IMG/VR virus record: IMGVR_UViG_3300021963_000023
Span: 124,001 to 188,000 of that record
DNA length: 64,000 nucleotides
Direction: 5' to 3' (one strand)
This document shows, in pieces, positions 12,448-37,715 of this stretch. Within the stretch, counting starts at the first letter, position 1. Every line of letters begins with the position of its first letter. Below the pieces are notes generated by a model that had not been told where the DNA came from, searched no databases, and saw nothing but the letters and a program-made list of their open reading frames with translations. Both the position numbers and the translations under genes were made by a program.

Positions 12448-14280
12448 ATGAGCAAAAAAATAGCATATACCAATAGAGATTTCGCCGGTTTAAGACAGGA
12501 CCTAGTAAATTTTACTAAAGAATATTATCCTGATATAATTCAGAATACTAATGACGCATCAATATATTCAGTATTGTTGGATTTGAATGCAGCAATTGCA
12601 GACAATCTACACTTTCATATTGATAGAGTTTGGCAAGAAACGATGCTTGATTTCGCACAACAAAAACAGTCGTTATTTCATATAGCTAAAACTTATGGAA
12701 TCAGAATTCCAGGATCTAGACCTTCAGTTGCATTATGCGATTTCAGCATAAATGTACCAGCAAAGGGTGATAAAGATGATGATAGATACGAAGGTATTTT
12801 AAGAGCCGGGGCTCAAGTTTCTGGAGGCGGTCAAATATTTGAAACAATTTCTGATATTGATTTTTCAAACCCATTCAACGAAAAGGGTGAAACAAATAGA
12901 TTAAAAATACCAAACTTTGATAATAATAATAAGTTAATTTCATATACCATTACCAAAAGAGAACCGGTTGTAAATGGAGTAACAAAAATATTTAGAAAAG
13001 CTATAAGTCAAAGAGACCAAAAGCCTTTTGTTAAAATTTATTTACCAGAAAAGAACGTTCTTGGTGTAACAACAATTATTCATAAAGAAGGAACCTCATT
13101 TGCTGGTAACCCCACAAGTAGTGAATTTATCACAGAACAAAATAAATGGTACGAAGTGCAATCTTTAGTTCAGGACAAAGTGTTTGTTCCTAGCAAAACT
13201 GCGGTGTCGGATAAAAAGAATTTTAAAGCTGGTGAATATATTAGAGTTAATAATAAATTTATAACAGAATATACACCAGAAGGGTTTTTCTTTTTAACCT
13301 TTGGCTCTGGTAATGTTGATCCACTAGATAATTTAGACAATTATATTACAAATAACCTAAAGGTTAATCTATCAACATATTTGAATAATATGTCATTAGG
13401 CGCAATACCAAAACAAGACACAACTCTATTCATCAAATATCGAATTGGAGGCGGTAAAGAGAGTAATTTAGGGGTTGGGGTGATAAACAACATAGAGAAC
13501 GTTGATTTTAGTATAAATGGCCCAAATCAGACTGTAAATGACCAAGTTCTACAATCTTTGGTTGTTACAAATATAACCCCAGCAGTTGGTGGATCTGATC
13601 AACCGGTATTAGAAGAGTTAAGAGGGATGATTGCATATAATTTTGCGGCTCAAAATAGAGCGGTAACATTAAATGACTATAAATCTATGATTGAAACCAT
13701 GCCATCTACATATGGGGCACCGGCCAAAGTTAATGTTATGGAAGAGGATAACAAGGTTAGAATCAAGTTGTTGTCATATGATGAGAATGGTAATTTAACC
13801 GACGTTGTGTCAAACACCTTAAAACAAAACATTGTATCATATCTTTCTGAATTTAGAATGATTAATGATTATATTGATATTGTTAGCGGTGAAGTAATTG
13901 ATCTAGGACTACAAATAGATATTCTCTTAGATAAGAACCAAAACCAAACAGAAGTACTTCGTGAAATCATCGGGGCTACCACATCTTATTTCTCAATTGA
14001 CAAAAGAAAAATGGGAGATCCATTATTTGTTGGTGAATTAATGAAAGAAGTAAATAACGTTCCTGGTGTTGTCAATGTTATTGATGTTAGAGTTTATAAT
14101 AAGATTGGTGGGGAATATTCATCATCTCAGGTTACTCAAAGCTACAAAGATGCTATTACTAAAGAAATTGCTCAAAGCAATATGACAGTATATATGAAAT
14201 CAAATCAAATATTTCAAATTAGATTCCCTCAAAAAGATATACAAATTAGGGTTATAACATTAGGAACGACTACATATTAA
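12448..14280 (+). CDS. Baseplate wedge protein, gp6 / baseplate J-like
   Basis: RDFAGLRQDL..., A.TYG.R, PAVGGSD, AQNRAVTLNDY motifs; follows gp25. Confidence 0.88.
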   Translation: MSKKIAYTNRDFAGLRQDLVNFTKEYYPDIIQNTNDASIYSVLLDLNAAIADNLHFHIDRVWQETMLDFAQQKQSLFHIAKTYGIRIPGSRPSVALCDFSINVPAKGDKDDDRYEGILRAGAQVSGGGQIFETISDIDFSNPFNEKGETNRLKIPNFDNNNKLISYTITKREPVVNGVTKIFRKAISQRDQKPFVKIYLPEKNVLGVTTIIHKEGTSFAGNPTSSEFITEQNKWYEVQSLVQDKVFVPSKTAVSDKKNFKAGEYIRVNNKFITEYTPEGFFFLTFGSGNVDPLDNLDNYITNNLKVNLSTYLNNMSLGAIPKQDTTLFIKYRIGGGKESNLGVGVINNIENVDFSINGPNQTVNDQVLQSLVVTNITPAVGGSDQPVLEELRGMIAYNFAAQNRAVTLNDYKSMIETMPSTYGAPAKVNVMEEDNKVRIKLLSYDENGNLTDVVSNTLKQNIVSYLSEFRMINDYIDIVSGEVIDLGLQIDILLDKNQNQTEVLREIIGATTSYFSIDKRKMGDPLFVGELMKEVNNVPGVVNVIDVRVYNKIGGEYSSSQVTQSYKDAITKEIAQSNMTVYMKSNQIFQIRFPQKDIQIRVITLGTTTY

Positions 14281-22285: not shown

Positions 22286-23200
22286 ATGGCAGTAGGAAGT
22301 TACGGAACAATAAGACCGGCAGATGTGTCCCCAGAAGATGTAGAAATTATACTTCATTATGTGGCCAATAGAGCATCAACAACAGAACCAACATTAACAA
22401 AGTTGGATTCCGCTGATATTTTAACTCCAGTTTTTCATAATTCTGGAACCGGTGGAACATCTGGTACAGAAATTTTAGGTGGTTTATACAATCTTAGACT
22501 AAATAGTGACACATTTAGCGATTTAGGAATATATACATTACACCTTAGACCGAAGCAAATTAGAACTGAAATTACCGATTGTGGTGTTTTAGCATCACTA
22601 CCATCTGTCAGAGGATTGGTTATAGATTTGGGTAATGTTTTAACTGACGATAGAAATAATTTTGTTCCACAGGGTCTTGTTGGATATAGAGTTGAATATA
22701 TTGATAAATCAAACTCAAAAAAAGTTCCTAATTTTTATAGAATTGTCACATCTTCTTTTTATTGTGAACCAGTAACAACAAATTTAACAAATAGCACACA
22801 AAAAGCTATTAGATATAGATATTCAGATGCACCTACCAATTTGGTATTTTTAACCCTTACACCGTCTTCTGCACCTAGCAATCGACCAAATGTAACACCG
22901 TTCATTGGGGAGCCATCACAAAACATTATTTTAACTAACAGTTACTTTAACCCAACAACGGTTGAAGTTGAAATGGTTGAGCATGATGCATCAACACTTG
23001 CACACGCACTTTATGGTAATCAAAGTAAGGCGTTAAATTCTGGCGTTTATACAATTTATGACAAGAATAACAGTAACGCAATTTATAAACAGTTCAATCT
23101 TTATGAGGTTAAAGATGATCTTAACGAAACTCTATATGAAATTCGCGAAGAAAAAACTGATATAGACCAAACATTAAACTTTGACGATATTACCGAATAA
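22286..23200 (+). CDS. Putative virion structural protein (304 aa)
   Basis: TATTTATA upstream; coupled to next gene. Confidence 0.55.
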   Translation: MAVGSYGTIRPADVSPEDVEIILHYVANRASTTEPTLTKLDSADILTPVFHNSGTGGTSGTEILGGLYNLRLNSDTFSDLGIYTLHLRPKQIRTEITDCGVLASLPSVRGLVIDLGNVLTDDRNNFVPQGLVGYRVEYIDKSNSKKVPNFYRIVTSSFYCEPVTTNLTNSTQKAIRYRYSDAPTNLVFLTLTPSSAPSNRPNVTPFIGEPSQNIILTNSYFNPTTVEVEMVEHDASTLAHALYGNQSKALNSGVYTIYDKNNSNAIYKQFNLYEVKDDLNETLYEIREEKTDIDQTLNFDDITE

Positions 23201-26200
23201 TGGCAACAAAAAAAGTACCAAGTCAGGCTGCTAGTGGTTTCGAAACTTTTAGCGACAGTATTGTTGGAAGACAAATTACTGACGGTACTAGTCAATTAAC
23301 TAATACCAATTTTGCTCTAGATAGAGTTATTCCTGAAAAAGATGCGAAAAGTTTTAAAACGGCACCATTTTCTGATTTTCTTACATTAGAAGATCTTAAA
23401 ATAGAAAATGACGTTCCAACGACTGTCAAACAATCTAGTGGAGAAAAAAGACCAATAAGATTCAACCCAAATAAAACGGAGGGTTCAAAATCTTTATTTG
23501 GATCTCTTAGAGAACGTATTAGGGTATCGGTTGGTAGAATTCTTAAAAACTATCCAGCTGCAATTTATGTTGATTCAAGTGGTTTATCATCAACGTCAGA
23601 TTATTCAGCTGAAAATATTGTTTTTAATGCAACAAGTAATAAAACAACTTTTAATGTTAAATCAAGTAAATTCTTTAATCCATTTGATATAGTTTTATCT
23701 AAACCAACAGCAAATGATTTATTAACAGTTGATAACACAATTAGAAATTTATTCTCATCATATAACAAATATTCAATTATTATAAATGGTGAGGCATATA
23801 ATGTTTCAAAATATAGTGAGCCAACAACAAATAATATAATATCATTAGAAGTTTATGGGAAACCATTTACTGGTTCAACATATTCTACTAGCTATATTAT
23901 TAGACCAAACGATGCTGTTGTTGAAGAGTTTTATCTTGGGTTAGATGACTTAGAACAAACATTATTAAACAGGGATACATATCCAATATTTCAAGCATCA
24001 TTTAAAGTACCTAGAACTAGTTTAGATGAAACAAGAACAGACTTAATTAACGTTCTTGTTGAATGGCCAGTTTCTAATGATGGATGGAATCCACAAACAA
24101 CAGGTTTAAAATTTGATGCATATATAACTAGATTAAATGATCTTGCAACAGAAATTGATGATTATAAATCAAATTTAGTAACAAGATTTTTAGTTGCACC
24201 ACAATTATTTGAATTTGATACAGAAGATCAAAAAGTTGATAAAATTTTTCAACTATATGGTCAAAGTTTTGACAAGGTTAAATCCTTTATTGACAATATT
24301 GCATACATGAGAAATGTGTCATATGATTCAATAAACAATATACCAGATGTTTTTCTTAAAAATTTAGCAAATACATTAGGTTTAAATACCATTAATTTAT
24401 TTGATCAAAAAACATTAGAAGAACAAATATACAAAGCGTCTAAATCGGTTTATAACGGTTCATCAATCGGTAAAAACTTAGTGGATGGTGAATTAGAATT
24501 TTATAGAAGATTATTAGTTAATCTTGCTTTTATATATAAATCAAAAGGAACAAGAAGTAGTATTGAATTTTTCTTAAAATTCATTGGTGCTCCAGATCCT
24601 ATGGTTAAGATTAATGAGTACGTATACAATGTAAAAACTGCTCTTTCAAAAACATCAGTTGAAGATGATATCTTTAATGTTATCAATAATGTTGCTGTAA
24701 CCAATAAGGTAACATTTAATTCAACAACATATAAGTATAATTTAAGCGCTGCCACTGGGTTAACAAGTTTTAGTAATACTACTGACTACCCAATAGATAG
24801 TGACACTTATTTACCAAAAACACCAACAACAAATCAGGATAATATATTTTTCCAAATGGGTTCTGGTTGGCATAATGTTAGTTTAGATCACAGATCTTCA
24901 GATATTATAGATACGGATAGTTCTAAAGGTACCTTTGTGGATGGTGAATTTATATTAACAGGTAGAACAAAAACAATATTAACCAAATCAAAACCATATT
25001 CTTATGGTGAAGAGTTTTTTGATATATACAGAACTTTTCCTGGTTTAGATTATGGATATACATTAGAAAGTAAGATTGATAATGTTAAAAGTCAGGTTGT
25101 TGATGATTTAACTGGAACTGGATTAGTTTTAAATAGAAAAAATATTAGTGTATTTGTTAGCCCAGCTAACGCAAGTAACTATGACATTTGGAGAAAATCA
25201 AGAGAATTAGAAGTAGTATTTGGAAATAATAGTTTAGAGGTACAGAGTGAAATAAGTTTTGCAGAATATCTTGATAATACTTTTTCAACACAAGTAATCA
25301 ATTCAAATTTAGTAAAATATAAGAAAAATTATATTCATCTAGAAGATGTATATCAAGATTATATTAATCAATTGGTATCTTCTGGATATACACCATATGA
25401 TTTTATTGATTCAACAGACTTTGTTAATCAAATGAGCCCTTATTGGTCAAATGTTTTAGAACAAATAATACCAGCAACCACATTATGGATGGGTGGTAAC
25501 TTGATTGAAAACAACATATTTGCAAGACCCAAATATGCATATAGAAAACCATGTAAACCAATTGAAATAATTGAAAATCTTTATCCAAATTTTGAAACAT
25601 TTATTGAAGAAGATTTGGAAACTATTGTGGGTGATCCAAATAATCTTAGAGGTTTAATATATTTTACTGGCGTTACGTTTACATTAAAAATGGACATTGA
25701 TGGTATTGAATATAGTGGCACAACATCTCAAGTTAAAATAACCGGAAATACCTTGTTTGATACTGGGTATACTGCAACCAATAGTTGTGGTGTTTTGGCG
25801 AGTTCATCAACAACAATACCATTAATTTGTGATTATAAAAATTGGATTAAATTAAATTTAACAACAACTAAGAATCTTTGGAAAACGGCCGTTATTAATT
25901 TAGTTAATAAAATCAATTCAACATATAACGAACCTATTGCGGGCCACATACCAACTGTATCACCATATAGTGGTGTTACTTATGGTTGTACTTCACTTCC
26001 TGGTGGTTGTAATGGTTATACACAATTAATATCATATGAGTTTTTTACAGATAATGATGGTATTGAAAAGGTTAAATTTATTGCACATAGTAATTCGGAC
26101 TGTTCAGAAAAAAGATATTTAGATTTTTATTTTGATGCAAAATATGATTATAGCGATCCAAGGTGTAGCTTAGATATTGAATTTACAACAGTTTGTCCTG

Positions 26201-28047
26201 ACGGTGTTAATTATCCGGTTTATACTGGATCTACAGCATGTAAATTAAAATCTGATGTTATAGTTAATATTACGGGTGCAACTATTCAATCTGGGGAAAC
26301 TTACGATTGGGGAATTTATATTCAAAGAAGAGGTATTCCTGGAATAAACTCTTATAATGGTTATCATCCAACATATAGTGATACAACTTTAGCCAAGGTT
26401 AGTGGAACAACATGTCAATTTAAAATATCTAATGTTTACGAAGATGAAGAAATTGATTTATTATTTACTGACGCCGCTAACTGTGATAAAAAAATTAAAA
26501 TAAAAGGTTTAGCATTACAATATGTTGAGTTTCCAACAGAGTCACCAGATCAACCAACAGTAATTAATACCGGATTTACAATACATCCAAAAATACAATA
26601 TAGAAATTCATATAACTATGGATTAAAACATGATACAAAAGTATTGGTTGTAAGTGGTGCAACAATTAACGGATCAACAACCTCTGCTAATATTCAGACT
26701 TATATTAGTGCTGGAACATTAGTTAAAAAAGATGTTAAAGATTTAGTTGCTGGAAACGTTATTGTTTCTGCAACTTATTCATCTTGTTCAACACTATCAA
26801 GTACTTCATTTGAAATTGCTAAATTGAATAATAATTATTCATTCTCATATTCTTATACAACATATACAATATCTGATATTGACTTTTTAGGATCAGTTAA
26901 AACCAGTGTTATTAGTGGAAGAACCGTTAGTGGTACAACAATAGTATTTGAAGTTTTACCAACAACTAAATTTAGAATTTACACAAATAAAAACGTTAAT
27001 GAAACCACAGGATTAATAACAAAAAGAAGTGGCTACGCATTTGACAATAGATCACCAGAATTTTTACAAATTAAACCAGAGACGCCAATTGAACCATGTT
27101 GTGATTATCCTTCAGATTATTATGATACTGGTGATTATATTATAACAGAGAAGGGCCAACTTATTGAAGTTATTTCGGTTGATTTAAATTACTGTGATAT
27201 CAATATGTATTATAACATAAACATCACTACTGCAACATCAACTAGCCCAACTAATTTAATTACATTTAATGGTAATTCAAATTATTTAGCATTAGTTGAA
27301 CATCAATATATTGGATTTAATAGATTGGATGCATCATTACAACAATACTATGTTGATAATGTTTGTTGTACAGAAACACCATCAATTGCTTCATTAGAAA
27401 GAAATTATTCAAACTTATGTAGTGGAAACAACGCATATAATTGTGTTGGTTCATATCCAATTATAACACCAGCACCAACAAGAACACCAAACCCAACACC
27501 AACACCTAGTCCATCGGGAACGCCTGGGCCAACACCAACAAGAACCCCAACACCAACACCAAGCGCTAGTTCAACTCCAACACCAACACCAAGTTCTTCT
27601 CCAACCCCAACCCCATCGGTTACGGCAGCGGGTGACTTCTGTGCTGATATTGTGTTTACTGGACCGACAGCAACTCCAACAGCAACTGCAAATTTATTAT
27701 TTAGAATTAATTGGTCTATTAAGGGTGGCTCGTCTTCTGGTTTAGAAATTCTATCAGTATCCTCCGCAGTATTATTAAGTGAATCTTCATCAGGGGTTGA
27801 TAGAACTGGGTTTATCGATGTTACCCTATCAGATTTACCGTATACTGTAACTGGTAGGTGGAATAGTGGTTCGGGTAATATTGTAAGATATAATATTTGT
27901 GATATTACAAACGGAGGAGAAATATTCACCAGTAGTGCAATTAACAATATGAATATGGAAGAATCACACACGGTTTCTCCAACACCATATGAAATAAAAG
28001 TTAGTGTTGTAGGACAAAATAACACACCTATGTCATGCCCAATATAA
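23200..28047 (+). CDS. Large baseplate wedge/tail protein (gp7 / P2 gpI-like core) with degenerate Hint-like domain and C-terminal Pro/Thr linker
   Basis: IPDVFLKNLANTLG...YRRLLVNLAFIYKSKGTRSSIEFFLKFIG is the P2 gpI/gp7-type KGT motif; Hint-like blocks at aa 1141-1369; PT repeats near C-terminus. Confidence 0.6.
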   Translation: MATKKVPSQAASGFETFSDSIVGRQITDGTSQLTNTNFALDRVIPEKDAKSFKTAPFSDFLTLEDLKIENDVPTTVKQSSGEKRPIRFNPNKTEGSKSLFGSLRERIRVSVGRILKNYPAAIYVDSSGLSSTSDYSAENIVFNATSNKTTFNVKSSKFFNPFDIVLSKPTANDLLTVDNTIRNLFSSYNKYSIIINGEAYNVSKYSEPTTNNIISLEVYGKPFTGSTYSTSYIIRPNDAVVEEFYLGLDDLEQTLLNRDTYPIFQASFKVPRTSLDETRTDLINVLVEWPVSNDGWNPQTTGLKFDAYITRLNDLATEIDDYKSNLVTRFLVAPQLFEFDTEDQKVDKIFQLYGQSFDKVKSFIDNIAYMRNVSYDSINNIPDVFLKNLANTLGLNTINLFDQKTLEEQIYKASKSVYNGSSIGKNLVDGELEFYRRLLVNLAFIYKSKGTRSSIEFFLKFIGAPDPMVKINEYVYNVKTALSKTSVEDDIFNVINNVAVTNKVTFNSTTYKYNLSAATGLTSFSNTTDYPIDSDTYLPKTPTTNQDNIFFQMGSGWHNVSLDHRSSDIIDTDSSKGTFVDGEFILTGRTKTILTKSKPYSYGEEFFDIYRTFPGLDYGYTLESKIDNVKSQVVDDLTGTGLVLNRKNISVFVSPANASNYDIWRKSRELEVVFGNNSLEVQSEISFAEYLDNTFSTQVINSNLVKYKKNYIHLEDVYQDYINQLVSSGYTPYDFIDSTDFVNQMSPYWSNVLEQIIPATTLWMGGNLIENNIFARPKYAYRKPCKPIEIIENLYPNFETFIEEDLETIVGDPNNLRGLIYFTGVTFTLKMDIDGIEYSGTTSQVKITGNTLFDTGYTATNSCGVLASSSTTIPLICDYKNWIKLNLTTTKNLWKTAVINLVNKINSTYNEPIAGHIPTVSPYSGVTYGCTSLPGGCNGYTQLISYEFFTDNDGIEKVKFIAHSNSDCSEKRYLDFYFDAKYDYSDPRCSLDIEFTTVCPDGVNYPVYTGSTACKLKSDVIVNITGATIQSGETYDWGIYIQRRGIPGINSYNGYHPTYSDTTLAKVSGTTCQFKISNVYEDEEIDLLFTDAANCDKKIKIKGLALQYVEFPTESPDQPTVINTGFTIHPKIQYRNSYNYGLKHDTKVLVVSGATINGSTTSANIQTYISAGTLVKKDVKDLVAGNVIVSATYSSCSTLSSTSFEIAKLNNNYSFSYSYTTYTISDIDFLGSVKTSVISGRTVSGTTIVFEVLPTTKFRIYTNKNVNETTGLITKRSGYAFDNRSPEFLQIKPETPIEPCCDYPSDYYDTGDYIITEKGQLIEVISVDLNYCDINMYYNINITTATSTSPTNLITFNGNSNYLALVEHQYIGFNRLDASLQQYYVDNVCCTETPSIASLERNYSNLCSGNNAYNCVGSYPIITPAPTRTPNPTPTPSPSGTPGPTPTRTPTPTPSASSTPTPTPSSSPTPTPSVTAAGDFCADIVFTGPTATPTATANLLFRINWSIKGGSSSGLEILSVSSAVLLSESSSGVDRTGFIDVTLSDLPYTVTGRWNSGSGNIVRYNICDITNGGEIFTSSAINNMNMEESHTVSPTPYEIKVSVVGQNNTPMSCPI

Positions 28048-28062
28048 AATTAAAATAAATAA

Positions 28063-29772
28063 ATGTTAACAACCTTTACATATAGCGGGCATTATAACGG
28101 AAAACCTTCATGGCAAGGTAGTCTAAGCGGCGTTACATGTAATGTAAGATGGAATGGTACTGATTATTGGACAATAACATCGTGGCCATATGGTGGTGAA
28201 CCCAAGAATTATACAACAACAAATTCTCCGAGCAGTGGTTGGGTTATTAGTGGAACTACTAGTGTTAGTTCAATTACCCTTAATTTAGGTAGTTGTCCAC
28301 TACCACCTACTTCTACACCAACAAGAACACCAACACCAACACCATCGTCAAGTCCAACACCAACTCCAAGTGTGACACCTAATTGTAATTTCGGTGTGGG
28401 AGTAGTTGTATTAACAGCAACACCAACACCAACACCATCCGCAACTCCAAACTGTAATTTCGGTGTGGGAGTAGTTGTATTAACAGCAACACCAACGCCA
28501 ACAATAAGTCCTTCAACAACACCTAGTCCAACACCATCTGCTACACCTAATTGTAATTTTGGTGTGGGGGTAGTGGTATTAACTGCAACACCAACGCCAA
28601 CCCCGTCATCAAGCAGTACACCAACACCAACACCATCTGCCACACCTAATTGTAATTTTAATGTGGGGGTTTTTGTTGCAACTCCAACTCCAACAGCTAG
28701 TAACTCACCAAGTCCAACCCCTAGTACAACACCTAGTCCAACACCATCTGCTACACCTAATTGTGATTTTAATGTTGGTGTGATTGTATTAACAGCAACC
28801 CCAACTCCGTCAGCAAGTTCAACACCAATTCCTACTCCAACACCATCATCAAGCAGTACTCCGACTCCAACACCATCCGCAACTCCAAATTGTGATTTTG
28901 GTGTGGGTGTGATTGTATTAACCGCAACACCAACCCCAAGTGCTACACCATCACCAACTCCTAGTACTACACCAAGTCCTAGTGCAACACCATCACCAAC
29001 TCCGAGCGCAACTCCTAATTGCGATTTTGGAGTAGATATACTTGTTTTAACGGCAACGCCAACACCAACACAATCAGCAACACCAAATCCAACACCGAGT
29101 CCTAGCCCATCATCAACACCGGAACCAACACCATCCGCAACAGCAAATTGTGATTTTAATGTTGATGTATTTGTGGCAACACCTACACCAACAGCAACTA
29201 TTGCGCCAACACCAACACCGTCGTCGACACCATTCCCAACAAGTACACCAACAACAACACCTAGTCCAACACCAACAACAACTGTTGATTGTGCTTTGGA
29301 TACAACAGTTAATCCAGAGTTAACTGAGGTGGTAAACTGTTTAGCTAGTATGGAATTTATTGTTCAATACAGCCCAACTTTGGGGCCATGCCCTGGTGGT
29401 CATCAATGTAATGCCGCAACATTTTACTTAAGAGGTAATAACGTTACAATTGGTACAGTTTATTTAAGTAATAATGGATTTACCGATCAGCTTAATTACC
29501 CACCTGGAATTACTAGTGGCTTAGCTAGATATAATTCATTAACATTAACAACACAACAAGCTCAAAATATTGCTGCATCGTCAACTGGTGGTAACATAAG
29601 TTTCTCACTTGTTTGTGCAACACCAATAAATGTAAACTATGGTTATGGTTTTGGAGGTTGCCACACAAACGTAACTTGGATTACATTAAAACTTAATAAT
29701 GAAACAATCTATAGTGGTTGTCCAAATAATAATTTCTTAACTATAAACCCATGTACTGGGGTAATATCATAA
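28063..29772 (+). CDS. Mucin-like Pro/Thr-rich fibre/decoration protein with Cys-containing beta repeats
   Basis: 569 aa; 8 clear ATPNC(N/D)F(G/N)V.V.V(LT)ATPTP units separated by PT/PS linkers; Cys-rich C-terminal domain. Confidence 0.7.
28381..29310 (+). repeat. In-frame coding direct repeats (NC(N/D)FxVxVxV unit)
   Basis: Units start at 28381, 28450, 28549, 28648, 28759, 28888, 29017, 29146 and (degenerate) 29287; all spacings are multiples of 3. Confidence 0.9.
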
Positions 29773-29773
29773 T

Positions 29774-30052
29774 ATGGAAGTAATAATAACAAATAAAATT
29801 TTAACATATACAAATAACAATTATACCATTGATATAAATGATTTATTTACATTAAATAATACTATGGTTATGGTTAAAGAACTATTTACTTTAAACGATG
29901 AAATGTATATTAGCTATATTGATGATCAAGGTAATGGTTTGTTAATCGAGAAAGCAAATGATTTTATCGAAAATAATAAAAACTATTTTAATAGTGTAAC
30001 AAAATCGTTAATCACAACAAATAATGAATCAAATTGTGGTTGTGGTTGCTAA
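29774..30052 (+). CDS. Small hypothetical protein ending in NCGCGC
   Basis: 92-aa ATG ORF packed between fibre genes. Confidence 0.7.
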   Translation: MEVIITNKILTYTNNNYTIDINDLFTLNNTMVMVKELFTLNDEMYISYIDDQGNGLLIEKANDFIENNKNYFNSVTKSLITTNNESNCGCGC

Positions 30053-30064
30053 AAATAAATAATA

Positions 30065-33000
30065 ATGGCAAAGAAGTTTTATGTAAAGATTGTTTCTGGT
30101 ACTGATGCTGGTCCTTATAATATTTATTATGATCAGGTTAATTCAGCAAATCTTGCAACCAATTTCGATACGTCATTTATTGCCAGTGGTGTTACACGTA
30201 GTGAATTAATATCAAGCTTAGGTGTACACATTAGCGTTCCAGATGGTGCAGTTAAAATAATTGTTTATAATACGAATAGTAGAGTAATTGCGGAGTGCCA
30301 ATCAAATATTGATGAAACTTTTCTACCAACTCCATTACCAACACCAACGCCTTCGCCTAGTCCTTCACCAAGCCCAAGTCCTAGCCCTTCGCCAACTCCG
30401 AGTGCAACTCCGAATTGTGATTTTGGGGTAGATATTATTGTATTAACTGCAACACCTACACCAACTCCGTCCACAACACCAAATGCTACACCAGGCCCAA
30501 CGGCAGGACCAACTCCAGCACCAACATCAACACCAAGTTCAACACCTTCACCAACAACTAATTGTGCATTTTTAATTAATACAACAGTTAATCATGCGCC
30601 AACAGATATATCGTTAAGTCACAATAGAATAAATGAAAATTCAGCAATTGGAACACTAGTTGGTTATTTATCAACAACATCAGGTGATAGTGGTGATATA
30701 CACGCATATTCTGTGGTAAATTCAGCCCCTTTTAGTATTATTAGTGATGGATTATATAGTTCAATATCGTTCAATTATGAGGTAGCAACTTCATATACAG
30801 TGGCAATCCGCACCACTGATAGTGTTGGTCAAACATATGATAAACAATTTACGGTTTATGTTGATAATGTTAATGAGGCGCCATATGGTATAAACATTTC
30901 TGGATCAATACCTGAGAATAGTTCAATAGGAACAACCGCAGGTACGTTATCTACTTTAGATCCGGATGCTGGCGATACATTTACATATAGTTTTATTAAT
31001 ACCGGTTCATATCCGGATAATAATAGTTTTAATTTATCTTCTGGTGGAGTATTAACATCAACAGCTGTTTTTGATCTTGAAACAAAAAGTTCATATCTAT
31101 TAAATGTAAGAACAACAGATTCTGGAGGTTTAACATATGATGGTCTTGTGTCTGTATCAGTAACTAATGTCAATGAACCACCAACAGGAATTGATTTATC
31201 ATCATCTTCAATATCTGAAAATGTTCCAACGGGAACTACCATTGGTACCCTTTCAACATATGATCCCGATGCTGGTGATACATTTACATATACCCTTATT
31301 GATCCTCTTCAATATCCAGACAATGTAAATTTTACAATTACAGGGGCGGTTTTAAAATCTAAATCTGTATTTAATTATGAGACAAAAGATACATACCTTA
31401 TAGGAGTTAGGTCAACAGATGCTTTAGGTTCATATGCTGATGAATTAATATATATTTACATAACAGATGTTGTTATAACGGCATCTAGGTCTTCAACAAA
31501 TGTCACTTGTAATGGTGGATCAGATGGTACAATAACAATATCTAGTATTGTTGGTGGGACTGGTAGTTACACATATTCAAAAAATGGTAGTACCTATCAA
31601 TCAAGTAATGTATTTACAGGTTTAACAGCTCAAACATATGCATTATATGTTAAAGATTCATATGGTGAAGTTGGTCAATTAACATCTCTAGCAATAACAC
31701 AACCAACAATAGTAAGTTTTACAGCAACTGGAACAGCACCAACGTGTAATGGTGGTTCAGATGGTTCAATAACATTATCTAGTGTTAGTGGAGGTGTTTC
31801 GCCATACACGTATTCTAAAGATGGTTCAACATATCAATCTGGTTTATCATTTACAGGTTTAACAAATGGTACGTATACAACATATGTTAAAGATGCTAGT
31901 GGATGTGTTAGAACAAATACCACTGGTTTAAATAGAACACAAGTAAGCGCAACAATATCACAATCAAATGTGGCATGTTACAATGGAACAACAGGTTCAA
32001 TTACAGTAAGTAGCGGTACTGGTGGATCAGGGTCCGGTTATCAATCAAAAATTGGTTCTGGAGGAACATATGCGAATTTACCAGTAACATATTCTAGTTT
32101 ATCTTCTGGTGCATATACAATATTTGTTAAAGATAGTTCTGATTGTGTTAATAGTTTTAGTATAACAATAACTCAACCAGCGACTCCAGTTAGTGCTAAT
32201 CCAGATACGAATATCGCACCAACTTGTTACAACGATAGTGATGGACAAGTTGCGTTTTATGGTAGTGGAGGAACATCACCATATACATATTCAATAGATG
32301 GTACAAATTATCAATCTAGTTATATATTCAGCAATTTATCAAATGGTAATTATACTGGTTATGTGAAAGATGCTAATGGTTGTATTGCAACAATTGTAAG
32401 AAATATTAATAGAAGTGCACCATCAGCATCATATAGTATTAGTAATGTTTCATGTAATGGTGGATCAAATGGTTCAATAGTTGTAAGTAGCGGTACTGGT
32501 GGATCAGGGGCTGGTTATCAAGCCAAAAAAGGTTCTGGAGGAACATATGCAAGTTTACCAGTAACCTATTCTAGTTTATCTGCGGGAACGTATACAATAT
32601 ATATTAAAGATAATTCAGGTTGTATTCAAACATACAATCAAACAATAACACAACCAAGTGCTGTATCAATATCGGTATCTGGTACAAATCCAACATGTTG
32701 GAACGGTAGTAATGGTTCAGTATCTGCTTCAGGTTCTGGCGGAACGGGTAGTTACACTTATTCAAAAGATGGAACAAACTATCAATCTAGCGGAACTTTT
32801 AGTAGTTTGGGTACTGGATATTATACAATCTATGTTAAAGACAGCAATGGTTGTATAACATATGATTATGTGTTATTATCTAAATCCGAACCAAATGCAA
32901 CAATATCTGTAACCAATCCAGTTTGTAACGCAGGAACGGGAACGATCGTTGTTTCTGGTGGTTCTGGAGGTTCAGGTTCGGGATACCAAGCAAAAAATGG

Positions 33001-34186
33001 TTCTGGTGGTACGTATGCGAACTTACCAGTAACCTATTCATCATTAGGTGGTGGCGCGTATACAATTTTCATTAAAGATGGCGCTGGTTGTGAACAATCA
33101 TATTCAGCAACTGTAACCATACCATCGGCAGTATCTGGTTCTTTTATTGGTGCGTCTTTTCCAACTTGTTCTTATTCATCAAATGGATCATTAACAGTTC
33201 AAGGTGGTGGCGGTACACCAAACGCATCCGGATACAAATATTCTATTAGTAGTAATGGTGGTTCATATTCCGCATATACCATATTTAAATCGTCACATAC
33301 GTTTAGTAGTTTAGTAAGTGGTAGTCACTCAATAATAGTTTTAGATAATGAGAGTTGTTATACAATTATTACATATAACCTAACAGTATCTGCTCCAGAA
33401 CTTGGAACAGTAACAACTACAAACGTTACTTGTAATGGTGGTTCAAATGGTGAAATTTCTGTGGTAAGTTTAATAGGTGGGTCATCACCTAGACAAGTTT
33501 CAATAGATGGAGAGACATTTCATTATCCACCTAAAGCATTTAGTAGTTTATATGCTGGGGAATATACATTATATGTAAGAGACGGGAATGGTTGTGAGAG
33601 TCAATATTACAGAACAATAAGTCAACCAAGCGCGCAAACAGTATCATTAAGTGTTGTAACAGCCCCAACCTGTGCAAGTGGTGTTGATGGAGTTATGGCT
33701 TTATCTTCTTCTGGTGGTGTGTTCCCTAAAACATATCGATTATATGAGGATACATCATTCCCTTATAATACTTGTGGAGGGGACTTGATTGGTACATATG
33801 GAACGGGTACATATGGTACAACATTTAATGTATCTGATTTAACTCCTGGAGGGTATTGTTTAGAAGTAACGGATGCGAATGGTTGTGTAACTAATAGTGG
33901 GGTGGTTGTATTAACACAATCTGCGGTTTATTACGCTTATCAAGTAATTAGATGTTCTAATGGTCAATATTCATCAATGACATCACCACATTTATTACCT
34001 AGTCAATTCTTAGGTGGCCTCAAGGCTGTTAAAATTAATGATGTATGTTGGCAGATCGATTATTATGCGACGACAACCTGTACACAAGAGACCCTTCATT
34101 TAATTGATGGTGAATATTCAGGATATTACGAAACATGTACTAGTTGTACAAGTGGTGGGCCTGGAGGAGGACAACAATACTTATAA
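30065..34186 (+). CDS. Adhesin-like virion protein: PT linker + 3 cadherin-like repeats + 10 SprB-type repeats + Cys-rich C-terminal domain
   Basis: Cadherin motifs (NEAP..I...ENS.IGT.G.L...DPDAGDTFTY...F(D/N)YE....VRTTD.G); SprB-type units (T.VTCNGGSDG.I.....GG...YTYS.DG..YQ....F..L..G.Y...VKD..GC); no signal peptide. Confidence 0.85.
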   Translation: MAKKFYVKIVSGTDAGPYNIYYDQVNSANLATNFDTSFIASGVTRSELISSLGVHISVPDGAVKIIVYNTNSRVIAECQSNIDETFLPTPLPTPTPSPSPSPSPSPSPSPTPSATPNCDFGVDIIVLTATPTPTPSTTPNATPGPTAGPTPAPTSTPSSTPSPTTNCAFLINTTVNHAPTDISLSHNRINENSAIGTLVGYLSTTSGDSGDIHAYSVVNSAPFSIISDGLYSSISFNYEVATSYTVAIRTTDSVGQTYDKQFTVYVDNVNEAPYGINISGSIPENSSIGTTAGTLSTLDPDAGDTFTYSFINTGSYPDNNSFNLSSGGVLTSTAVFDLETKSSYLLNVRTTDSGGLTYDGLVSVSVTNVNEPPTGIDLSSSSISENVPTGTTIGTLSTYDPDAGDTFTYTLIDPLQYPDNVNFTITGAVLKSKSVFNYETKDTYLIGVRSTDALGSYADELIYIYITDVVITASRSSTNVTCNGGSDGTITISSIVGGTGSYTYSKNGSTYQSSNVFTGLTAQTYALYVKDSYGEVGQLTSLAITQPTIVSFTATGTAPTCNGGSDGSITLSSVSGGVSPYTYSKDGSTYQSGLSFTGLTNGTYTTYVKDASGCVRTNTTGLNRTQVSATISQSNVACYNGTTGSITVSSGTGGSGSGYQSKIGSGGTYANLPVTYSSLSSGAYTIFVKDSSDCVNSFSITITQPATPVSANPDTNIAPTCYNDSDGQVAFYGSGGTSPYTYSIDGTNYQSSYIFSNLSNGNYTGYVKDANGCIATIVRNINRSAPSASYSISNVSCNGGSNGSIVVSSGTGGSGAGYQAKKGSGGTYASLPVTYSSLSAGTYTIYIKDNSGCIQTYNQTITQPSAVSISVSGTNPTCWNGSNGSVSASGSGGTGSYTYSKDGTNYQSSGTFSSLGTGYYTIYVKDSNGCITYDYVLLSKSEPNATISVTNPVCNAGTGTIVVSGGSGGSGSGYQAKNGSGGTYANLPVTYSSLGGGAYTIFIKDGAGCEQSYSATVTIPSAVSGSFIGASFPTCSYSSNGSLTVQGGGGTPNASGYKYSISSNGGSYSAYTIFKSSHTFSSLVSGSHSIIVLDNESCYTIITYNLTVSAPELGTVTTTNVTCNGGSNGEISVVSLIGGSSPRQVSIDGETFHYPPKAFSSLYAGEYTLYVRDGNGCESQYYRTISQPSAQTVSLSVVTAPTCASGVDGVMALSSSGGVFPKTYRLYEDTSFPYNTCGGDLIGTYGTGTYGTTFNVSDLTPGGYCLEVTDANGCVTNSGVVVLTQSAVYYAYQVIRCSNGQYSSMTSPHLLPSQFLGGLKAVKINDVCWQIDYYATTTCTQETLHLIDGEYSGYYETCTSCTSGGPGGGQQYL
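30590..31471 (+). repeat. Three tandem cadherin-like repeats
   Basis: Units begin NHAPTDI, NEAPYGI, NEPPTGI. Confidence 0.8.
31480..33920 (+). repeat. Ten tandem SprB-type repeats (~80 aa each)
   Basis: Cys-Asn/Gly starts TCNGGSDG, TCNGGSDG, ACYNGTTG, TCYNDSDG, SCNGGSNG, TCWNGSNG, VCNAGTG, TCSYSSNG, TCNGGSNG, TCASGVDG. Confidence 0.8.
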
Positions 34187-34229
34187 AAAAAACAAAATAA
34201 ACAGATATTTATAATAAAAAAAGAAGACA

Positions 34230-34805
34230 ATGCAAATTACATTCACATTAAGTCCAAGTTATACAGGATCAACATACGTTGCTGGTCCTTTTAATATTTC
34301 AGGTACAACCAGCGCAGGAACAACCTATTGGTTAGTAACTGGTGTTACAAAATCACAATTAACAACTGGTCACACAATAACCACAGCATATGAAACTCTA
34401 ACAGGTGGAACTATTGCTAGTACTGGAACATGCACAACAACTCAACCATGGTATGTTACAACACCATCACCGACACCGACACCAACAGCAACAGAAAGTG
34501 GTGTAGCATTAACAGCGGTAGGGCTTCAAGGTCCATATCAAACTTGTGCAAACGCATGTTCAGCATATAATTCAAACCCGTCATTTACACAATTCTATAT
34601 GACAACAAATGACTTTAATGGATTGGCGTCACTTAATGGCACATTGTACACACAAAATATTGCTAGTCCAAGTAACTATGTAAATGCTGGATGGTATTAT
34701 CATAATTCTAGTTATATTATAGAGGTTGGGCAAAGTGGTGTTGTTCAGGCTACTATGTATCAATGTCAACCAAATGGACAATGCGGCGGAGGTGTTATAA
34801 ATTAA
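34230..34805 (+). CDS. Small virion fibre/decoration protein with PT linker
   Basis: N-terminal domain (AGPFNISG) resembles N-terminus of 30065 (AGPYNIYY); PT linker; Cys-containing C-terminus; own TATTTATA. Confidence 0.6.
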   Translation: MQITFTLSPSYTGSTYVAGPFNISGTTSAGTTYWLVTGVTKSQLTTGHTITTAYETLTGGTIASTGTCTTTQPWYVTTPSPTPTPTATESGVALTAVGLQGPYQTCANACSAYNSNPSFTQFYMTTNDFNGLASLNGTLYTQNIASPSNYVNAGWYYHNSSYIIEVGQSGVVQATMYQCQPNGQCGGGVIN

Positions 34806-34828
34806 TTAGGTTCAATTTTAATATTATT

Positions 34829-34856
34829 AAAACCCCTTTATTTAAAGGGGTTTTTT
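34829..34856. terminator. Intrinsic terminator (possibly bidirectional)
   Basis: aaaaccccttta/taaaggggtttt perfect stem flanked by A and T runs. Confidence 0.85.
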
Positions 34857-34889
34857 ATTTAAATTTTTAATTATTGTATTTATAGTAAT

Positions 34890-36503
34890 ATGGGATTAAA
34901 CATAAGATTATACGGGATAAATTCACCGAAGGCTTTTACCTTATCATATAAAACTGGTAAAACTGCTGGTAATGAGTCTGTTATAGCAACAGGGTACACA
35001 TCTTATGGTTCATTATATCCCACTAGTATATCAAGAAATTATACAAATGATCCAATTATTTTTACAAATGCATCTTTTGATACACAATATTGGTTTAAGT
35101 TAACATATACTGGAGATACTGGTGATGTAAATTATTACGTTCAAAATATATTTACAAATGAAGCTGAAGTTTATGATAATTGTATAAATTGTTGTTACTT
35201 CCCTAATGTTGGAACAGCATCTTTTGTACCACCACCAACTGCAACACCAGCCGCCACACCAGGACCAACACCAGGACCAACACCAGGACCAACACCAGGA
35301 CCAACACCAGGTGCTACACCAGCAGCTACACCAGCCGCAACTCCTGCAGCTACCCCTGCAGCAACACCAGCTCCAACGGCAACGGCAACGACACCAGGAG
35401 CAACACCAGGACCAACAGCGGGACCAACTCCTGGGCCAACAGCGGGAGCAACACCACTGCCAACACCAACAGTTACTGCAACAGCATTACCTGGAACTTG
35501 TTATACTATGGTTTTCCCAACATCAGTTACAACTTTTGACGGAAAAACATTATATATAAATTATCAAAAAACAGATGATACATATGCTTCTTGGCCATAT
35601 TCACAATATGAAGATTCTGGATCAAACAGCCCTAGCATAACAATTAAAATATGTTCTAAAACATATCCAACTCTTAAATATGGTCCATCAGGTGATCAAC
35701 TTGTACCGGATGCGAACTTTACTATTACTTCTGGTGCAGGTTGTACAACTAGCACCAATTGCGGAGGTAGCGATCCAGTAACACCACCACCAACAGCAAC
35801 AGCCCCAGTAATTACGAATGCTAGTGGTGATTGTTATAAATGGTCAGTTAGTGATGGAAATAGTAATTCAGGAATGACAGTAACGTATACACCGTTAAAT
35901 ACTAACACACCAATAACAACTAATGTTAACATGGTTGAAAGTGATACACAATATTATTATATATGTTCTAAAACTATAGCGGATTTCAGATCGGGTGGTA
36001 ACCAAACAGTATTCCCATCAATACAAGATGGAACATGTAGTTTAGTTGATGGGGTATTTAGTGGTTGTCAAACACCTGCACCAGGACCAACACCAGGACC
36101 AACACCAGGATCAACACCAGCACCAACGCCAACACAAACGGCAGCACCAGGAACACCATGTATTTCAATAACCGAATATTCGTCACAACAGAATACTGAA
36201 TGTCTACTTAATACTGTACCATATTATTATACCACAATTACAGCATTATTAACCAATGGTAATGGTAATGCAATGAATGCTGTTGGTGATGTGTATGCTT
36301 ATGTTAGTGTTACGGAAAATTTCCTTTATCAGCAGGAAAGAACAGTTAATTATGATATTAAAATATTGAATGGAACAAGTTCAGCACAACTTACCGTTGT
36401 AACAGAAATACCAGTAGATAATGGACAAGGTAATTGTGAAAATGAAAGAAGAACAATAAATTCTTATAGTACACAGGCTGGATACAGTATATGTACACCT
36501 TAA
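34890..36503 (+). CDS. Pro/Thr/Ala-rich multidomain fibre/decoration protein
   Basis: TPGP/TPAA linkers separating small Cys-containing domains; own TATTTATA. Confidence 0.65.
   Translation: MGLNIRLYGINSPKAFTLSYKTGKTAGNESVIATGYTSYGSLYPTSISRNYTNDPIIFTNASFDTQYWFKLTYTGDTGDVNYYVQNIFTNEAEVYDNCINCCYFPNVGTASFVPPPTATPAATPGPTPGPTPGPTPGPTPGATPAATPAATPAATPAATPAPTATATTPGATPGPTAGPTPGPTAGATPLPTPTVTATALPGTCYTMVFPTSVTTFDGKTLYINYQKTDDTYASWPYSQYEDSGSNSPSITIKICSKTYPTLKYGPSGDQLVPDANFTITSGAGCTTSTNCGGSDPVTPPPTATAPVITNASGDCYKWSVSDGNSNSGMTVTYTPLNTNTPITTNVNMVESDTQYYYICSKTIADFRSGGNQTVFPSIQDGTCSLVDGVFSGCQTPAPGPTPGPTPGSTPAPTPTQTAAPGTPCISITEYSSQQNTECLLNTVPYYYTTITALLTNGNGNAMNAVGDVYAYVSVTENFLYQQERTVNYDIKILNGTSSAQLTVVTEIPVDNGQGNCENERRTINSYSTQAGYSICTP
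35256..35311 (+). repeat. Perfect 12-bp tandem repeat ACACCAGGACCA x4.7 (TPGP)
   Basis: Copies at 35256, 35268, 35280, 35292 plus a partial; the same unit recurs near 36080-36110. Confidence 0.9.
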
Positions 36504-36534
36504 TAATAAAATTAAAAAAAGATATTTATAGTAT

Positions 36535-37698: not shown

Positions 37699-37715
37699 AA
37701 TTAATGATATAAAAT

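What the first reader, a model, noticed from the sequence alone, without database searches (positions are those of the whole stretch)
30065..34186. Phage virion protein built from Bacteroidota surface-adhesin parts (cadherin + SprB repeats)
Seen: 3 cadherin-like and 10 SprB-type repeats, with no signal peptide and no T9SS C-terminal sorting domain, inside the structural gene block. SprB repeats 3, 5 and 7 share the insertion SG.GGSG.GYQ.K.GSGGTYA.LPVTYSSL and alternate with YTYS.DG-type units, which indicates duplication of a two-repeat block. Established: SprB is the Flavobacterium gliding adhesin, and cadherin repeats are Ca2+-dependent spacers. Inference: a captured host adhesin re-used as a long Ca2+-stiffened virion fibre for biofilm/particle attachment or for engaging gliding cells.
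Basis: partly seen in the sequence, partly recalled or inferred. Interest (0 to 1): 0.6.

Follow-up and report, generated by a model that had tools for sequence, protein, structure and literature searches.

The report
Jumbo-phage fibre of cadherin and SprB repeats
A 1373-residue protein of an uncultivated freshwater jumbo phage is a string of about 15 small beta-sandwich domains borrowed long ago from Bacteroidota surface adhesins, and it is most likely the phage's long host-binding fibre with an exchangeable tip, which is a fresh variant of a known theme, not a new kind of thing.

Summary
ORF 30065-34186 (+) encodes 1373 aa. It matches Pfam SprB (108 bits, cut-off 28) and Cadherin (64 bits, cut-off 28.8). 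It has three cadherin repeats and ten ~80-aa SprB-type units, no signal peptide and no T9SS sorting domain. Units R3/R5/R7 form a subfamily (67-68% identity, DNA period ~474 nt).

The contig is a 251-kb IMG/VR virus record with a T4-type capsid gene, a tail sheath gene and 22 tRNAs. The gene lies in a baseplate-to-fibre block that starts with a gp6-like wedge gene.

More than 50 metagenomic phage relatives keep the same N-terminal 80-aa domain and the same gene order. Their C-terminal tip is the least conserved part, and in some it is swapped for a domain that this phage carries in a neighbouring gene. That is the signature of a receptor-binding fibre.

Cellular T9SS adhesins match at only 31-36% identity over the whole SprB part (34-58% for single units). 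Phage units cluster together on a tree. So this is an old acquisition, not a fresh capture.

Ca2+-ligand motifs are conserved, but only in the three cadherin repeats.

SprB-like units already occur in proteomically verified tail proteins of cultured Flavobacteriia phages.

Virion location, host and ligand remain unproven.

The parts
30065..34186 (+). Whole gene, 1373 aa (P0001): the fibre-like protein
30065..30322 (+). N-terminal domain (aa 1-86), a small beta-sandwich and the proposed virion-attachment module. It is always at residue 1 in relatives and is single-copy in this genome.
30323..30592 (+). Two Pro/Thr/Ser-rich linkers (aa 87-116, 130-165), each followed by a short Cys-containing hydrophobic strand motif ([13 protein letters not shown] aa 117-129; NCAFLINTTV aa 166-175)
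30593..31480 (+). Three cadherin (EC) repeats (aa 177-272, 273-372, 373-472) with conserved xEN, DPDAGD, TD and NVNE.P positions
31481..33934 (+). Ten SprB-type units R1-R10. Amino-acid starts: 473, 552, 629, 712, 788, 869, 945, 1026, 1114, 1194; R10 ends at 1290. Each has a conserved Cys pair. R10 was modelled as an Ig-like sandwich.
31949..33139 (+). The alternating part R3-R7. B-type units R3, R5 and R7 (67-68% identical) alternate with A-type units R4 and R6. The DNA repeat period is ~474 nt.
33935..34183 (+). C-terminal Cys-rich domain (aa 1291-1373), the proposed binding tip. It is the least conserved segment and is replaced in many relatives.
12448..14280 (+). Baseplate wedge (gp6-like) gene that opens the structural block
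23200..28047 (+). 1615-aa protein with a C-terminal PT linker. Its homologues (1813-1999 aa) sit next to, or two short genes before, the fibre gene in relatives.
28063..29772 (+). P0002, 569 aa: 8-9 tandem copies of a PT linker plus the NC(D/N)F.VGV motif that is also present in P0001
35472..35807 (+). Residues 195-306 of the 537-aa neighbour (gene 34890-36503). They are homologous to the alternative tip carried by P0001 relatives P0017, P0019, P0027, P0031 and P0037.

Best explanation
P0001 is most likely a virion fibre of an uncultivated freshwater jumbo myovirus with a T4-type core, whose host is probably a member of the Bacteroidota.

Proposed working:
- The 80-aa N-terminal beta-sandwich plugs the protein into the baseplate or tail.
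- Two Pro/Thr-rich linkers act as flexible hinges.
- Three cadherin repeats, probably rigidified by Ca2+ at their junctions, and ten Ig-like SprB-type units form a thin beads-on-a-string stalk. Its length would be roughly 60-80 nm, an estimate from domain counts.
- The 83-residue disulfide-rich C-terminal domain is the exchangeable tip that contacts a host surface ligand during adsorption.

Shown: the domain content, the lack of secretion signals, the gene context, conservation across a phage family, tip variability and tip swapping, and the Ig-like fold of unit R10.

Inferred: presence in the virion, the attachment site, Ca2+ binding, oligomeric state, the ligand and the host.
For: Phage identity:
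- The contig is a virus record, 251 kb and about 75% complete.
- It has a Gp23-type capsid gene, a tail sheath gene and 22 tRNAs.

Gene context:
- A gp6-like baseplate wedge lies at 12448-14280.
- The block ends at a RuvC-like resolvase and a primase.
- In the nearest cultured phage with a related wedge (Flavobacterium phage immuto), tail fibre and spike genes follow the wedge at a similar distance.

The family:
- Full-length orthologues at 69-81% identity sit on contigs up to 268 kb, and the three loci examined (L001-L003) show the same gene order.
- The N-domain is 83% conserved, the stalk 56-86% and the tip 55%.
- The tip is replaced in many kin, while the last unit R10 is kept in every relative whose C-terminus was examined.
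- The alternative tip is homologous (E 1e-20 to 1e-25) to part of this phage's own gene 34890-36503.
- The N-domain profile finds 327 cluster representatives. In nearly all of the 150 listed the domain starts at residue 1. Of ten scanned with Pfam, one carries Cadherin, two or three SprB, one VWA and five no known domain. The domain is single-copy here.

Precedent:
- A SprB-type unit occurs in phrog_26672. Its members are virion proteins placed second after the tape measure gene in Cellulophaga and Polaribacter phages, verified by MS/MS in Cellulophaga phage phi19:1.

Fold:
- R10 plus the tip were modelled at pLDDT 90. R10 is an Ig-like sandwich with Z 9.6.

Cadherin repeats:
- They match CELSR1, protocadherin and cadherin-23 repeats at E 3e-34.
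- Several Ca2+-ligand positions, clearest in EC2 and EC3, are at least 90% conserved in 68 relatives.

Host hint:
- There is no Shine-Dalgarno enrichment (4.7% against 8.7% background).
- An A-rich patch lies at -13 to -11 and at -3. This is the Bacteroidota style of translation initiation as I know it from the literature.
Against: - There is no direct proof that the protein is in the virion. The phage is uncultivated and known only from metagenomes.
- The phrog_26672 match covers one domain type only (profile positions 207-277), so the 'virion structural protein' label does not transfer to the whole protein.
- The immediate neighbours have no recognisable family, so the block is called structural from one wedge gene plus gene order.
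- Classical tail fibres are trimeric beta-helical or coiled-coil rods. This protein is a chain of Ig-like domains, like capsid decoration proteins.
- A homotrimer test of the N-terminal part gave no verdict.
- The tip fold could not be searched on its own.
- The host phylum rests on indirect signals.
Confidence: 0.6

Rival explanations
1. It is a capsid, neck or whisker decoration (Hoc-like). It would serve non-specific adherence to particles, mucus-like polymers or biofilm, and would not recognise a specific receptor.
For: The protein is a chain of Ig-like and cadherin domains, as in phage decoration proteins; this comparison rests on my own knowledge of T4 Hoc. There is no trimerisation signal, and the trimer test gave no verdict. 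Weak fold hits include the Ig-like decoration protein of the phage N4 capsid.
Against: The gene is 74 kb from the capsid gene and lies inside the baseplate/fibre block. The tip is exchanged between fibre genes, which is typical of receptor-binding proteins. The N-domain is single-copy, and its protein keeps the same place in the baseplate/fibre gene block in the three related loci examined.
Confidence: 0.2
2. The fibre engages the host's own moving gliding adhesins (SprB/RemA-type) through like-with-like contacts between SprB or cadherin repeats. The gliding machinery would then carry the phage along or towards the cell surface.
For: SprB and RemA are thought to act as phage receptors in Flavobacterium johnsoniae (PMC9804748). 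The fibre shares domain types with such adhesins. Cadherins are known for homophilic binding (established knowledge).
Against: Nothing here tests binding. The stalk units are conserved while the non-SprB tip varies, which points to the tip as the specificity element. Identity to cellular units is low. The host is unknown, and so is whether it glides.
Confidence: 0.1
3. It is not a virion part. It would be a phage-encoded protein made during infection and freed at lysis, or an accessory gene that merely sits among structural genes.
For: There is no proteomic evidence. All neighbouring genes are unannotated.
Against: It has no signal peptide or T9SS domain for export. It keeps its place within the baseplate/fibre block in the three related loci examined. 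Its modular N-anchor, stalk and tip build matches fibres.
Confidence: 0.07

Closest known systems
phrog_26672: virion structural proteins of Flavobacteriia siphoviruses (Cellulophaga phage phi19:1 gp98, Nekkels_1 gp50, Polaribacter phage P12002L gp28)
   Same: They share a SprB-type ~70-aa Ig-like unit (P0001 hits profile positions 207-277 six times, E 2.6e-47). They are phage proteins of Bacteroidota hosts, placed in the tail-tip region, and phi19:1 gp98 is MS/MS-verified in virions.
   Different: Those proteins are 679-709 aa, with the shared unit as a small part of a different protein. They do not reach the Pfam SprB threshold. They have no cadherin repeats, no N-domain, no PT linkers and no ten-unit array. 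They come from ~50-kb siphoviruses, not from a jumbo myovirus.
SprB, the gliding-motility adhesin of Flavobacterium johnsoniae, and related T9SS repeat adhesins of Bacteroidota
   Same: The same repeat family (Pfam PF13573), with 34-58% identity for the best single units. All are long filaments of tandem beta-sandwich units.
   Different: P0001 has no signal peptide and no T9SS type A or type B C-terminal domain. It is encoded by a phage and is far shorter (1373 aa against 1,900-2,400 aa for the cellular hits found here). It has its own N-terminal anchor and C-terminal tip. Phage units form separate clades.
Cadherin extracellular repeats (CELSR1, protocadherins, cadherin-23) and bacterial cadherin-like adhesins
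   Same: Three repeats match at E 3e-34, with the xEx, DxDxG(D/N), D.E, TD and N-x-N-E-x-P positions aligned to the Ca2+-ligand motifs.
   Different: The linker motif is N-V-N-E-(A/P)-P, not D-x-N-D-N-x-P. EC1 lacks the DxD motif. There are only three repeats. Ca2+ binding was not measured.
Ig-like domain proteins on phage particles (T4 Hoc and similar; general knowledge, not tested here)
   Same: Tandem Ig-like domains are displayed on a virion, with a terminal domain that fixes them to the particle.
   Different: The gene lies in the baseplate/fibre block, not near head genes. It has 13 repeat domains plus a swappable tip. The anchor is N-terminal.
Cadherin-like domain proteins of Caulobacter and Brevundimonas jumbo phages (for example CcrRogue gp306)
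   Same: The cadherin part matches at 28-35% identity over ~300 aa. These are also large phages.
   Different: They have no SprB units. In CcrRogue the gene sits among replication genes. Their function is unknown as well.

Membership tests
Pfam SprB repeat (PF13573) | Score above the gathering cut-off of 28 bits | tested here: met
   108.3 bits in 6 stretches. Seven units hit on the DNA scan. The other three are joined by internal homology.
SprB-type T9SS gliding adhesin (as a protein, not a domain) | N-terminal Sec signal peptide | tested here: not met
   Residues 2-11 are a strand of a folded domain. Relatives have D/Q in that stretch. No dedicated predictor was available.
SprB-type T9SS gliding adhesin (as a protein, not a domain) | T9SS C-terminal sorting domain (type A TIGR04183/PF18962 or type B PF13585) | tested here: not met
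   No hit in Pfam or NCBIfam. The cellular control P0052 hits TIGR04183.
SprB-type T9SS gliding adhesin (as a protein, not a domain) | Encoded in a Bacteroidota chromosome | tested here: not met
   The contig is a virus record with capsid, sheath and baseplate genes.
Pfam Cadherin (PF00028) | Score above the gathering cut-off of 28.8 bits | tested here: met
   64.4 bits in 2 stretches. The third repeat is 37-46% identical to the other two. PDB cadherins match at E 3e-34.
Ca2+-binding cadherin repeat | Ca2+-ligand motifs at the repeat junctions | tested here: inconclusive
   xEN, DPDAGD, D/N.ET, TD and NVNE.P are present, and many of these positions are at least 90% conserved in 68 relatives. 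The linker differs from DxNDN and EC1 lacks DxD. Binding was not measured.
Phage receptor-binding fibre | Gene in the tail/baseplate module | tested here: met
   A gp6-like wedge lies 17.6 kb upstream, in one block of same-strand genes that ends at RuvC and primase genes. The order is analogous in Flavobacterium phage immuto.
Phage receptor-binding fibre | Conserved N-terminal anchor with a variable, mosaic C-terminal tip | tested here: met
   N-domain 83% against tip 55% among orthologues. The tip is swapped for a domain found in a neighbouring gene.
Phage receptor-binding fibre | Presence in the virion and binding to the host | not testable with these tools
   The phage is uncultivated. The only evidence is domain-level kinship to the tail protein family phrog_26672, one member of which (phi19:1 gp98) is MS/MS-verified in virions.
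Phage receptor-binding fibre | Homotrimeric assembly | tested here: inconclusive
   The three-copy prediction of residues 1-132 gave no verdict.
phrog_26672 | Match over the whole 679-position profile | tested here: not met
   P0001 matches only positions ~207-277, repeatedly. True members match positions 1-679.

The most novel reading that the evidence does not exclude
The fibre uses its SprB-type and cadherin units for like-with-like binding to the host's own moving gliding adhesins. A gliding Bacteroidota cell would then reel in the phage, comparable in logic to phages that ride a rotating flagellum. A family-wide N-terminal adaptor would let these jumbo phages mount many different adhesin arrays on one baseplate socket.
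Probability: 0.08. Interest if true: 0.8.

Novelty: new variant of a known kind. Interest (0 to 1): 0.42.

Why it matters
Freshwater jumbo phages of Bacteroidota are abundant but uncultivated, and how they find their hosts is unknown. Near-identical copies of this gene turn up in metagenomes filed under 20 study codes, most labelled freshwater.

The gene offers a defined, modular candidate for the adsorption apparatus, made of an anchor, hinges, a stalk and a swappable tip. The N-domain profile is a practical marker for finding such fibres in metagenomes. The tip domains are candidates for host-range prediction and for fishing hosts out of samples with labelled protein.

It also documents long-term sharing of adhesin domain families between Bacteroidota surfaces and their phages.

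It does not reveal a new principle. Ig-like domain arrays on phage particles and mosaic fibre tips are well known.

Tried and rejected
- Megablast of the gene against 50,697 phage records found no match.
- Profile comparison of the N-domain with the N-termini of the neighbours P0004 and gene 36535-37698 showed no relation (probability 2.5% and 0.1%).
- Fold search of the N-domain model (pLDDT 74) found only generic beta-sandwiches with Z below 5, so no specific family can be named.
- Fold searches of the R10-plus-tip model were filled by Ig-like matches to R10.
- The Atlas search of the tip gave scores of 0.78-0.81, within the range of chance.
- The three-copy complex prediction of residues 1-132 returned no verdict. 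It is not evidence either way.
- I tried to link the contig to the published 'moraphage' lineage (PMC12619734) through its DnaK or glutamine synthetase genes. Neither gene is on this 75%-complete contig, so the link stays open.
- Sequence search of three neighbouring large proteins against the PDB found nothing. The SprB part also has no PDB sequence match.
- The context of the cadherin-like gene in Caulobacter phage CcrRogue was uninformative.
- Cluster look-ups gave no organism names.
- RNA-library contigs match inside the gene without mismatches in three runs. DNA carry-over cannot be excluded, so this is not counted as proof of expression.
- The antisense ORF 30856-31242 (128 aa) lies wholly inside the gene, was not searched against any family library, and was not pursued.
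Full report
**The observation**

Window 30065-34186 (+) is a single open frame of 1373 codons. Pfam finds the SprB repeat (E 1.3e-31, 108.3 bits, cut-off 28, six stretches) and the Cadherin domain (E 1.3e-17, 64.4 bits, cut-off 28.8, two stretches).

Cutting the C-terminal two thirds at a recurring Cys gives ten units of 76-97 residues that align along their whole length. Seven of them are also hit by the 37-position Pfam model on a DNA scan. R7, R8 and R10 are joined by internal homology.

Three cadherin repeats (aa ~177-272, 273-372, 373-472) are 37-53% identical to each other.

R3, R5 and R7 are 67-68% identical to each other, and R2, R4 and R6 are 46-53%. A 213-nt DNA repeat recurs at spacings of 477 and 468 nt, which is every second unit.

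The 'insertion' is a variant motif only three residues longer.

No T9SS sorting domain is found by Pfam or NCBIfam, while a cellular hit used as a control does show one. The N-terminus is a strand of a folded domain, not a signal peptide.

**What the contig is**

The window is bases 124001-188000 of a single 251,149-bp contig with 32% G+C. The tools class it as an IMG/VR virus record, linear and about 75% complete.

- It has a T4 Gp23-type capsid gene at ~80 kb, a tail sheath gene at ~111 kb and 22 tRNA genes.
- In the window, replication and nucleotide genes (exonuclease, DnaB-like helicase, ribonucleotide reductase) are followed by a gp6-like baseplate wedge gene at 12448-14280.
- Then come thirteen same-strand genes, nine of them longer than 300 residues. 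None matches Pfam or NCBIfam, and PHROGs gives only weak hits to one family of unknown function.
- The block ends at a RuvC-like resolvase, a primase and SbcCD-like genes.
- The nearest cultured phage with a related wedge protein (26% identity) is Flavobacterium phage vB_FspM_immuto. There, tail fibre and tail spike genes follow the wedge 9-15 kb downstream.

P0001 therefore lies where fibres are expected. This rests on position, not on recognised neighbours.

**Architecture**

In order along the protein:
- aa 1-86: a small beta-sandwich (model pLDDT 74; only generic fold matches, Z below 5).
- aa 87-176: two Pro/Thr/Ser linkers, each followed by a short Cys-bearing hydrophobic motif ([23 protein letters not shown]).
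- aa 177-472: three cadherin repeats.
- aa 473-1290: ten SprB-type units.
- aa 1291-1373: a Cys-rich domain.

R10 plus the tip was modelled with pLDDT 90. R10 is an Ig-like sandwich (best Z 9.6, rmsd 2.5 Å over 80 residues). The tip is a second small beta domain that I could not search alone.

The cadherin part matches animal cadherin repeats (CELSR1, E 3e-34). The xEN, DPDAGD, D/N.ET, TD and NVNE.P positions align with the Ca2+-ligand motifs, and many of these positions, clearest in EC2 and EC3, are at least 90% conserved in 68 relatives.

Ca2+ stiffening is therefore plausible, but only for about 300 of 1373 residues. The linker motif is not canonical, and nothing was measured.

**The family**

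A search of 5.8 billion proteins gives over 5,700 hits. Eleven cluster representatives, all from metagenomes, are full-length orthologues (69-81% identity, 1370-1376 aa, same Pfam pair). Some lie on contigs of 135-268 kb. One lies on a 268-kb freshwater contig with the same order of neighbours.

More distant members (40-67%) keep the position next to a 1,900-2,000-aa protein. One 636-kb contig holds the locus twice, ~311 kb apart. That is a concatemer, so the full genome is near 311 kb.

Near-identical DNA of the gene is found in runs filed under 20 study codes, most labelled freshwater, lake or estuary.

Among the orthologues:
- the N-domain is 83% conserved;
- the cadherin repeats are 77-86%;
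- most units are 80-86%;
- R3 is 56% and R4 is 63%;
- the tip is only 55%.

In many relatives the tip is absent and another domain follows the conserved last unit. That alternative tip is homologous (37-49% identity, E 1e-20 to 1e-25) to residues 195-306 of this phage's own 537-aa protein, encoded two genes downstream. Two relatives carry the N-terminus of the upstream neighbour P0002 instead of the N-domain.

A profile of the N-domain finds 327 cluster representatives among 1.84 billion. In almost all of the 150 listed it lies at residue 1, on proteins of 64-1718 aa. Of ten scanned with Pfam, one carries Cadherin, two or three SprB, one VWA and five no known domain. In this genome it occurs once.

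A conserved N-terminal plug, a variable stalk and a shuffled tip are the hallmark of phage receptor-binding fibres (established knowledge).

**Repeat history**

Each unit of P0001 is most similar to the unit at the same position in orthologues, so the A/B alternation predates the split of these phages. There is one exception. R3 of P0001 is 44-49% identical to R3 of P0012 and P0015, but 66-69% identical to their R5 and R7. This indicates replacement or conversion of one unit.

The best cellular unit is 34-58% identical, against 57-84% in distant phage kin.

A FastTree of 70 phage and 207 cellular units needs 4 changes of label, against 62 on average for shuffled labels (minimum 53). All first units form one clade, all last units another, and the inner units form one clade of 53 with weak support (65). 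The tree uses ~80 columns and a chosen subset of proteins, so its deep branches are not reliable.

The reading is an old acquisition from Bacteroidota-type adhesins, followed by expansion inside phages. It is not capture of a host adhesin gene. The direction of transfer is inferred from the far wider spread of the repeat in cells.

**Host**

Upstream of 172 starts there is no Shine-Dalgarno enrichment (4.7% against 8.7% background). There is an A-rich patch at -13 to -11 (59-68% A) and at -3 (58%). To my knowledge this is the Bacteroidota pattern.

Low G+C, the related wedge protein in a Flavobacterium phage, and the Bacteroidota-restricted repeat family agree with this. None of it is proof.

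**What is already known**

P0001 hits phrog_26672 ('virion structural protein') at E 2.6e-47, but only on profile positions ~207-277, six times.

The true members are 679-709-aa proteins of Cellulophaga phages phi19:1 and Nekkels and of Polaribacter phage P12002L. They are encoded second after the tape measure gene. Phi19:1 gp98 is annotated from MS/MS of virions. They do not reach the Pfam SprB threshold.

So this kind of unit is already present in proven tail proteins of Flavobacteriia phages. The ten-unit array fused to cadherin repeats, PT hinges and the N-domain is not described. Full-text searches for SprB repeats in phages found nothing relevant.

A 2025 paper describes aquatic jumbo 'moraphages' with predicted Flavobacteriia hosts (PMC12619734). 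I could not tell whether this contig belongs to them.

SprB and RemA are thought to be phage receptors in F. johnsoniae (PMC9804748). This keeps the 'engaging gliding cells' idea alive, but only as a speculation.

**Expression**

Contigs from four freshwater metatranscriptome libraries match the gene. In three runs, pieces of 134-224 nt match without mismatches. DNA in those libraries cannot be excluded.

**Verdict**

The best explanation (confidence about 0.6) is a baseplate-attached, beads-on-a-string host-binding fibre with an exchangeable tip. The main rival is a decoration or adherence fibre.

It is a new variant of a known kind, of moderate interest. Its main value is as a handle on adsorption and host range in an abundant, uncultivated group of freshwater jumbo phages.

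Noticed in passing
window 28063-29772 (+), P0002: A 569-aa protein holds 8 strict copies plus 1 degenerate copy of a Pro/Thr linker followed by TPNC(D/N)F(G/N)VGV(V/I)V(L)TA. The DNA tandem period is 99-129 nt. The same motif occurs twice in P0001 and in many relatives just after the N-domain. Its role is unknown; strand pairing or disulfide links between fibre proteins are possible.
   Followed up: partly
window 23200-37698: Six consecutive genes all carry Pro/Thr-rich linkers, while the baseplate genes upstream carry none. G+C rises to 0.35-0.385 over roughly the same stretch (window 28000-38000), perhaps because of the linker codons.
   Followed up: partly
window 34890-36503 (+), residues 195-306: This domain of a neighbouring gene serves as the C-terminal tip of P0001 relatives in other phages. 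It shows tip shuffling between different fibre genes.
   Followed up: yes
window 31949-32197 (unit R3): R3 is far less like R3 of some orthologues (44-49%) than like their R5 and R7 (66-69%). One unit was replaced or converted within the array.
   Followed up: partly
C-termini of genes 29774-30052, 30065-34186, 34230-34805 and 36535-37698: The proteins end in Gly- or Cys-rich tails (NCGCGC; GGPGGGQQYL; CGGGVIN; SSGGGGGGGGLT). This is unexplained.
   Followed up: no
whole contig G000 (start-codon upstream regions): There is no Shine-Dalgarno signal. An A-rich patch lies at -13 to -11 and at -3, which fits Bacteroidota-style translation initiation.
   Followed up: partly
G000:C1:45593-50489 and 246799-246889 (outside the window): A cluster of 21 tRNA genes on the minus strand, plus one more near the contig end.
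   Followed up: no
L003/L004 (JGI contig of 636,496 bp): The fibre locus occurs twice, ~311 kb apart, on one contig. This is an assembled concatemer and suggests a genome of ~311 kb for a related phage. It fits the 75% completeness estimate for the 251-kb contig.
   Followed up: partly
window 30856-31242 (-): An antisense ORF of 128 aa lies wholly inside the fibre gene. It was not searched against any family library. It is probably a chance frame.
   Followed up: no
window 29774-30052 (+), P0003: A 92-aa gene directly upstream is kept at the same place in the 268-kb relative L001, but is absent in L002 and L003. It might be an assembly helper for the fibre.
   Followed up: no
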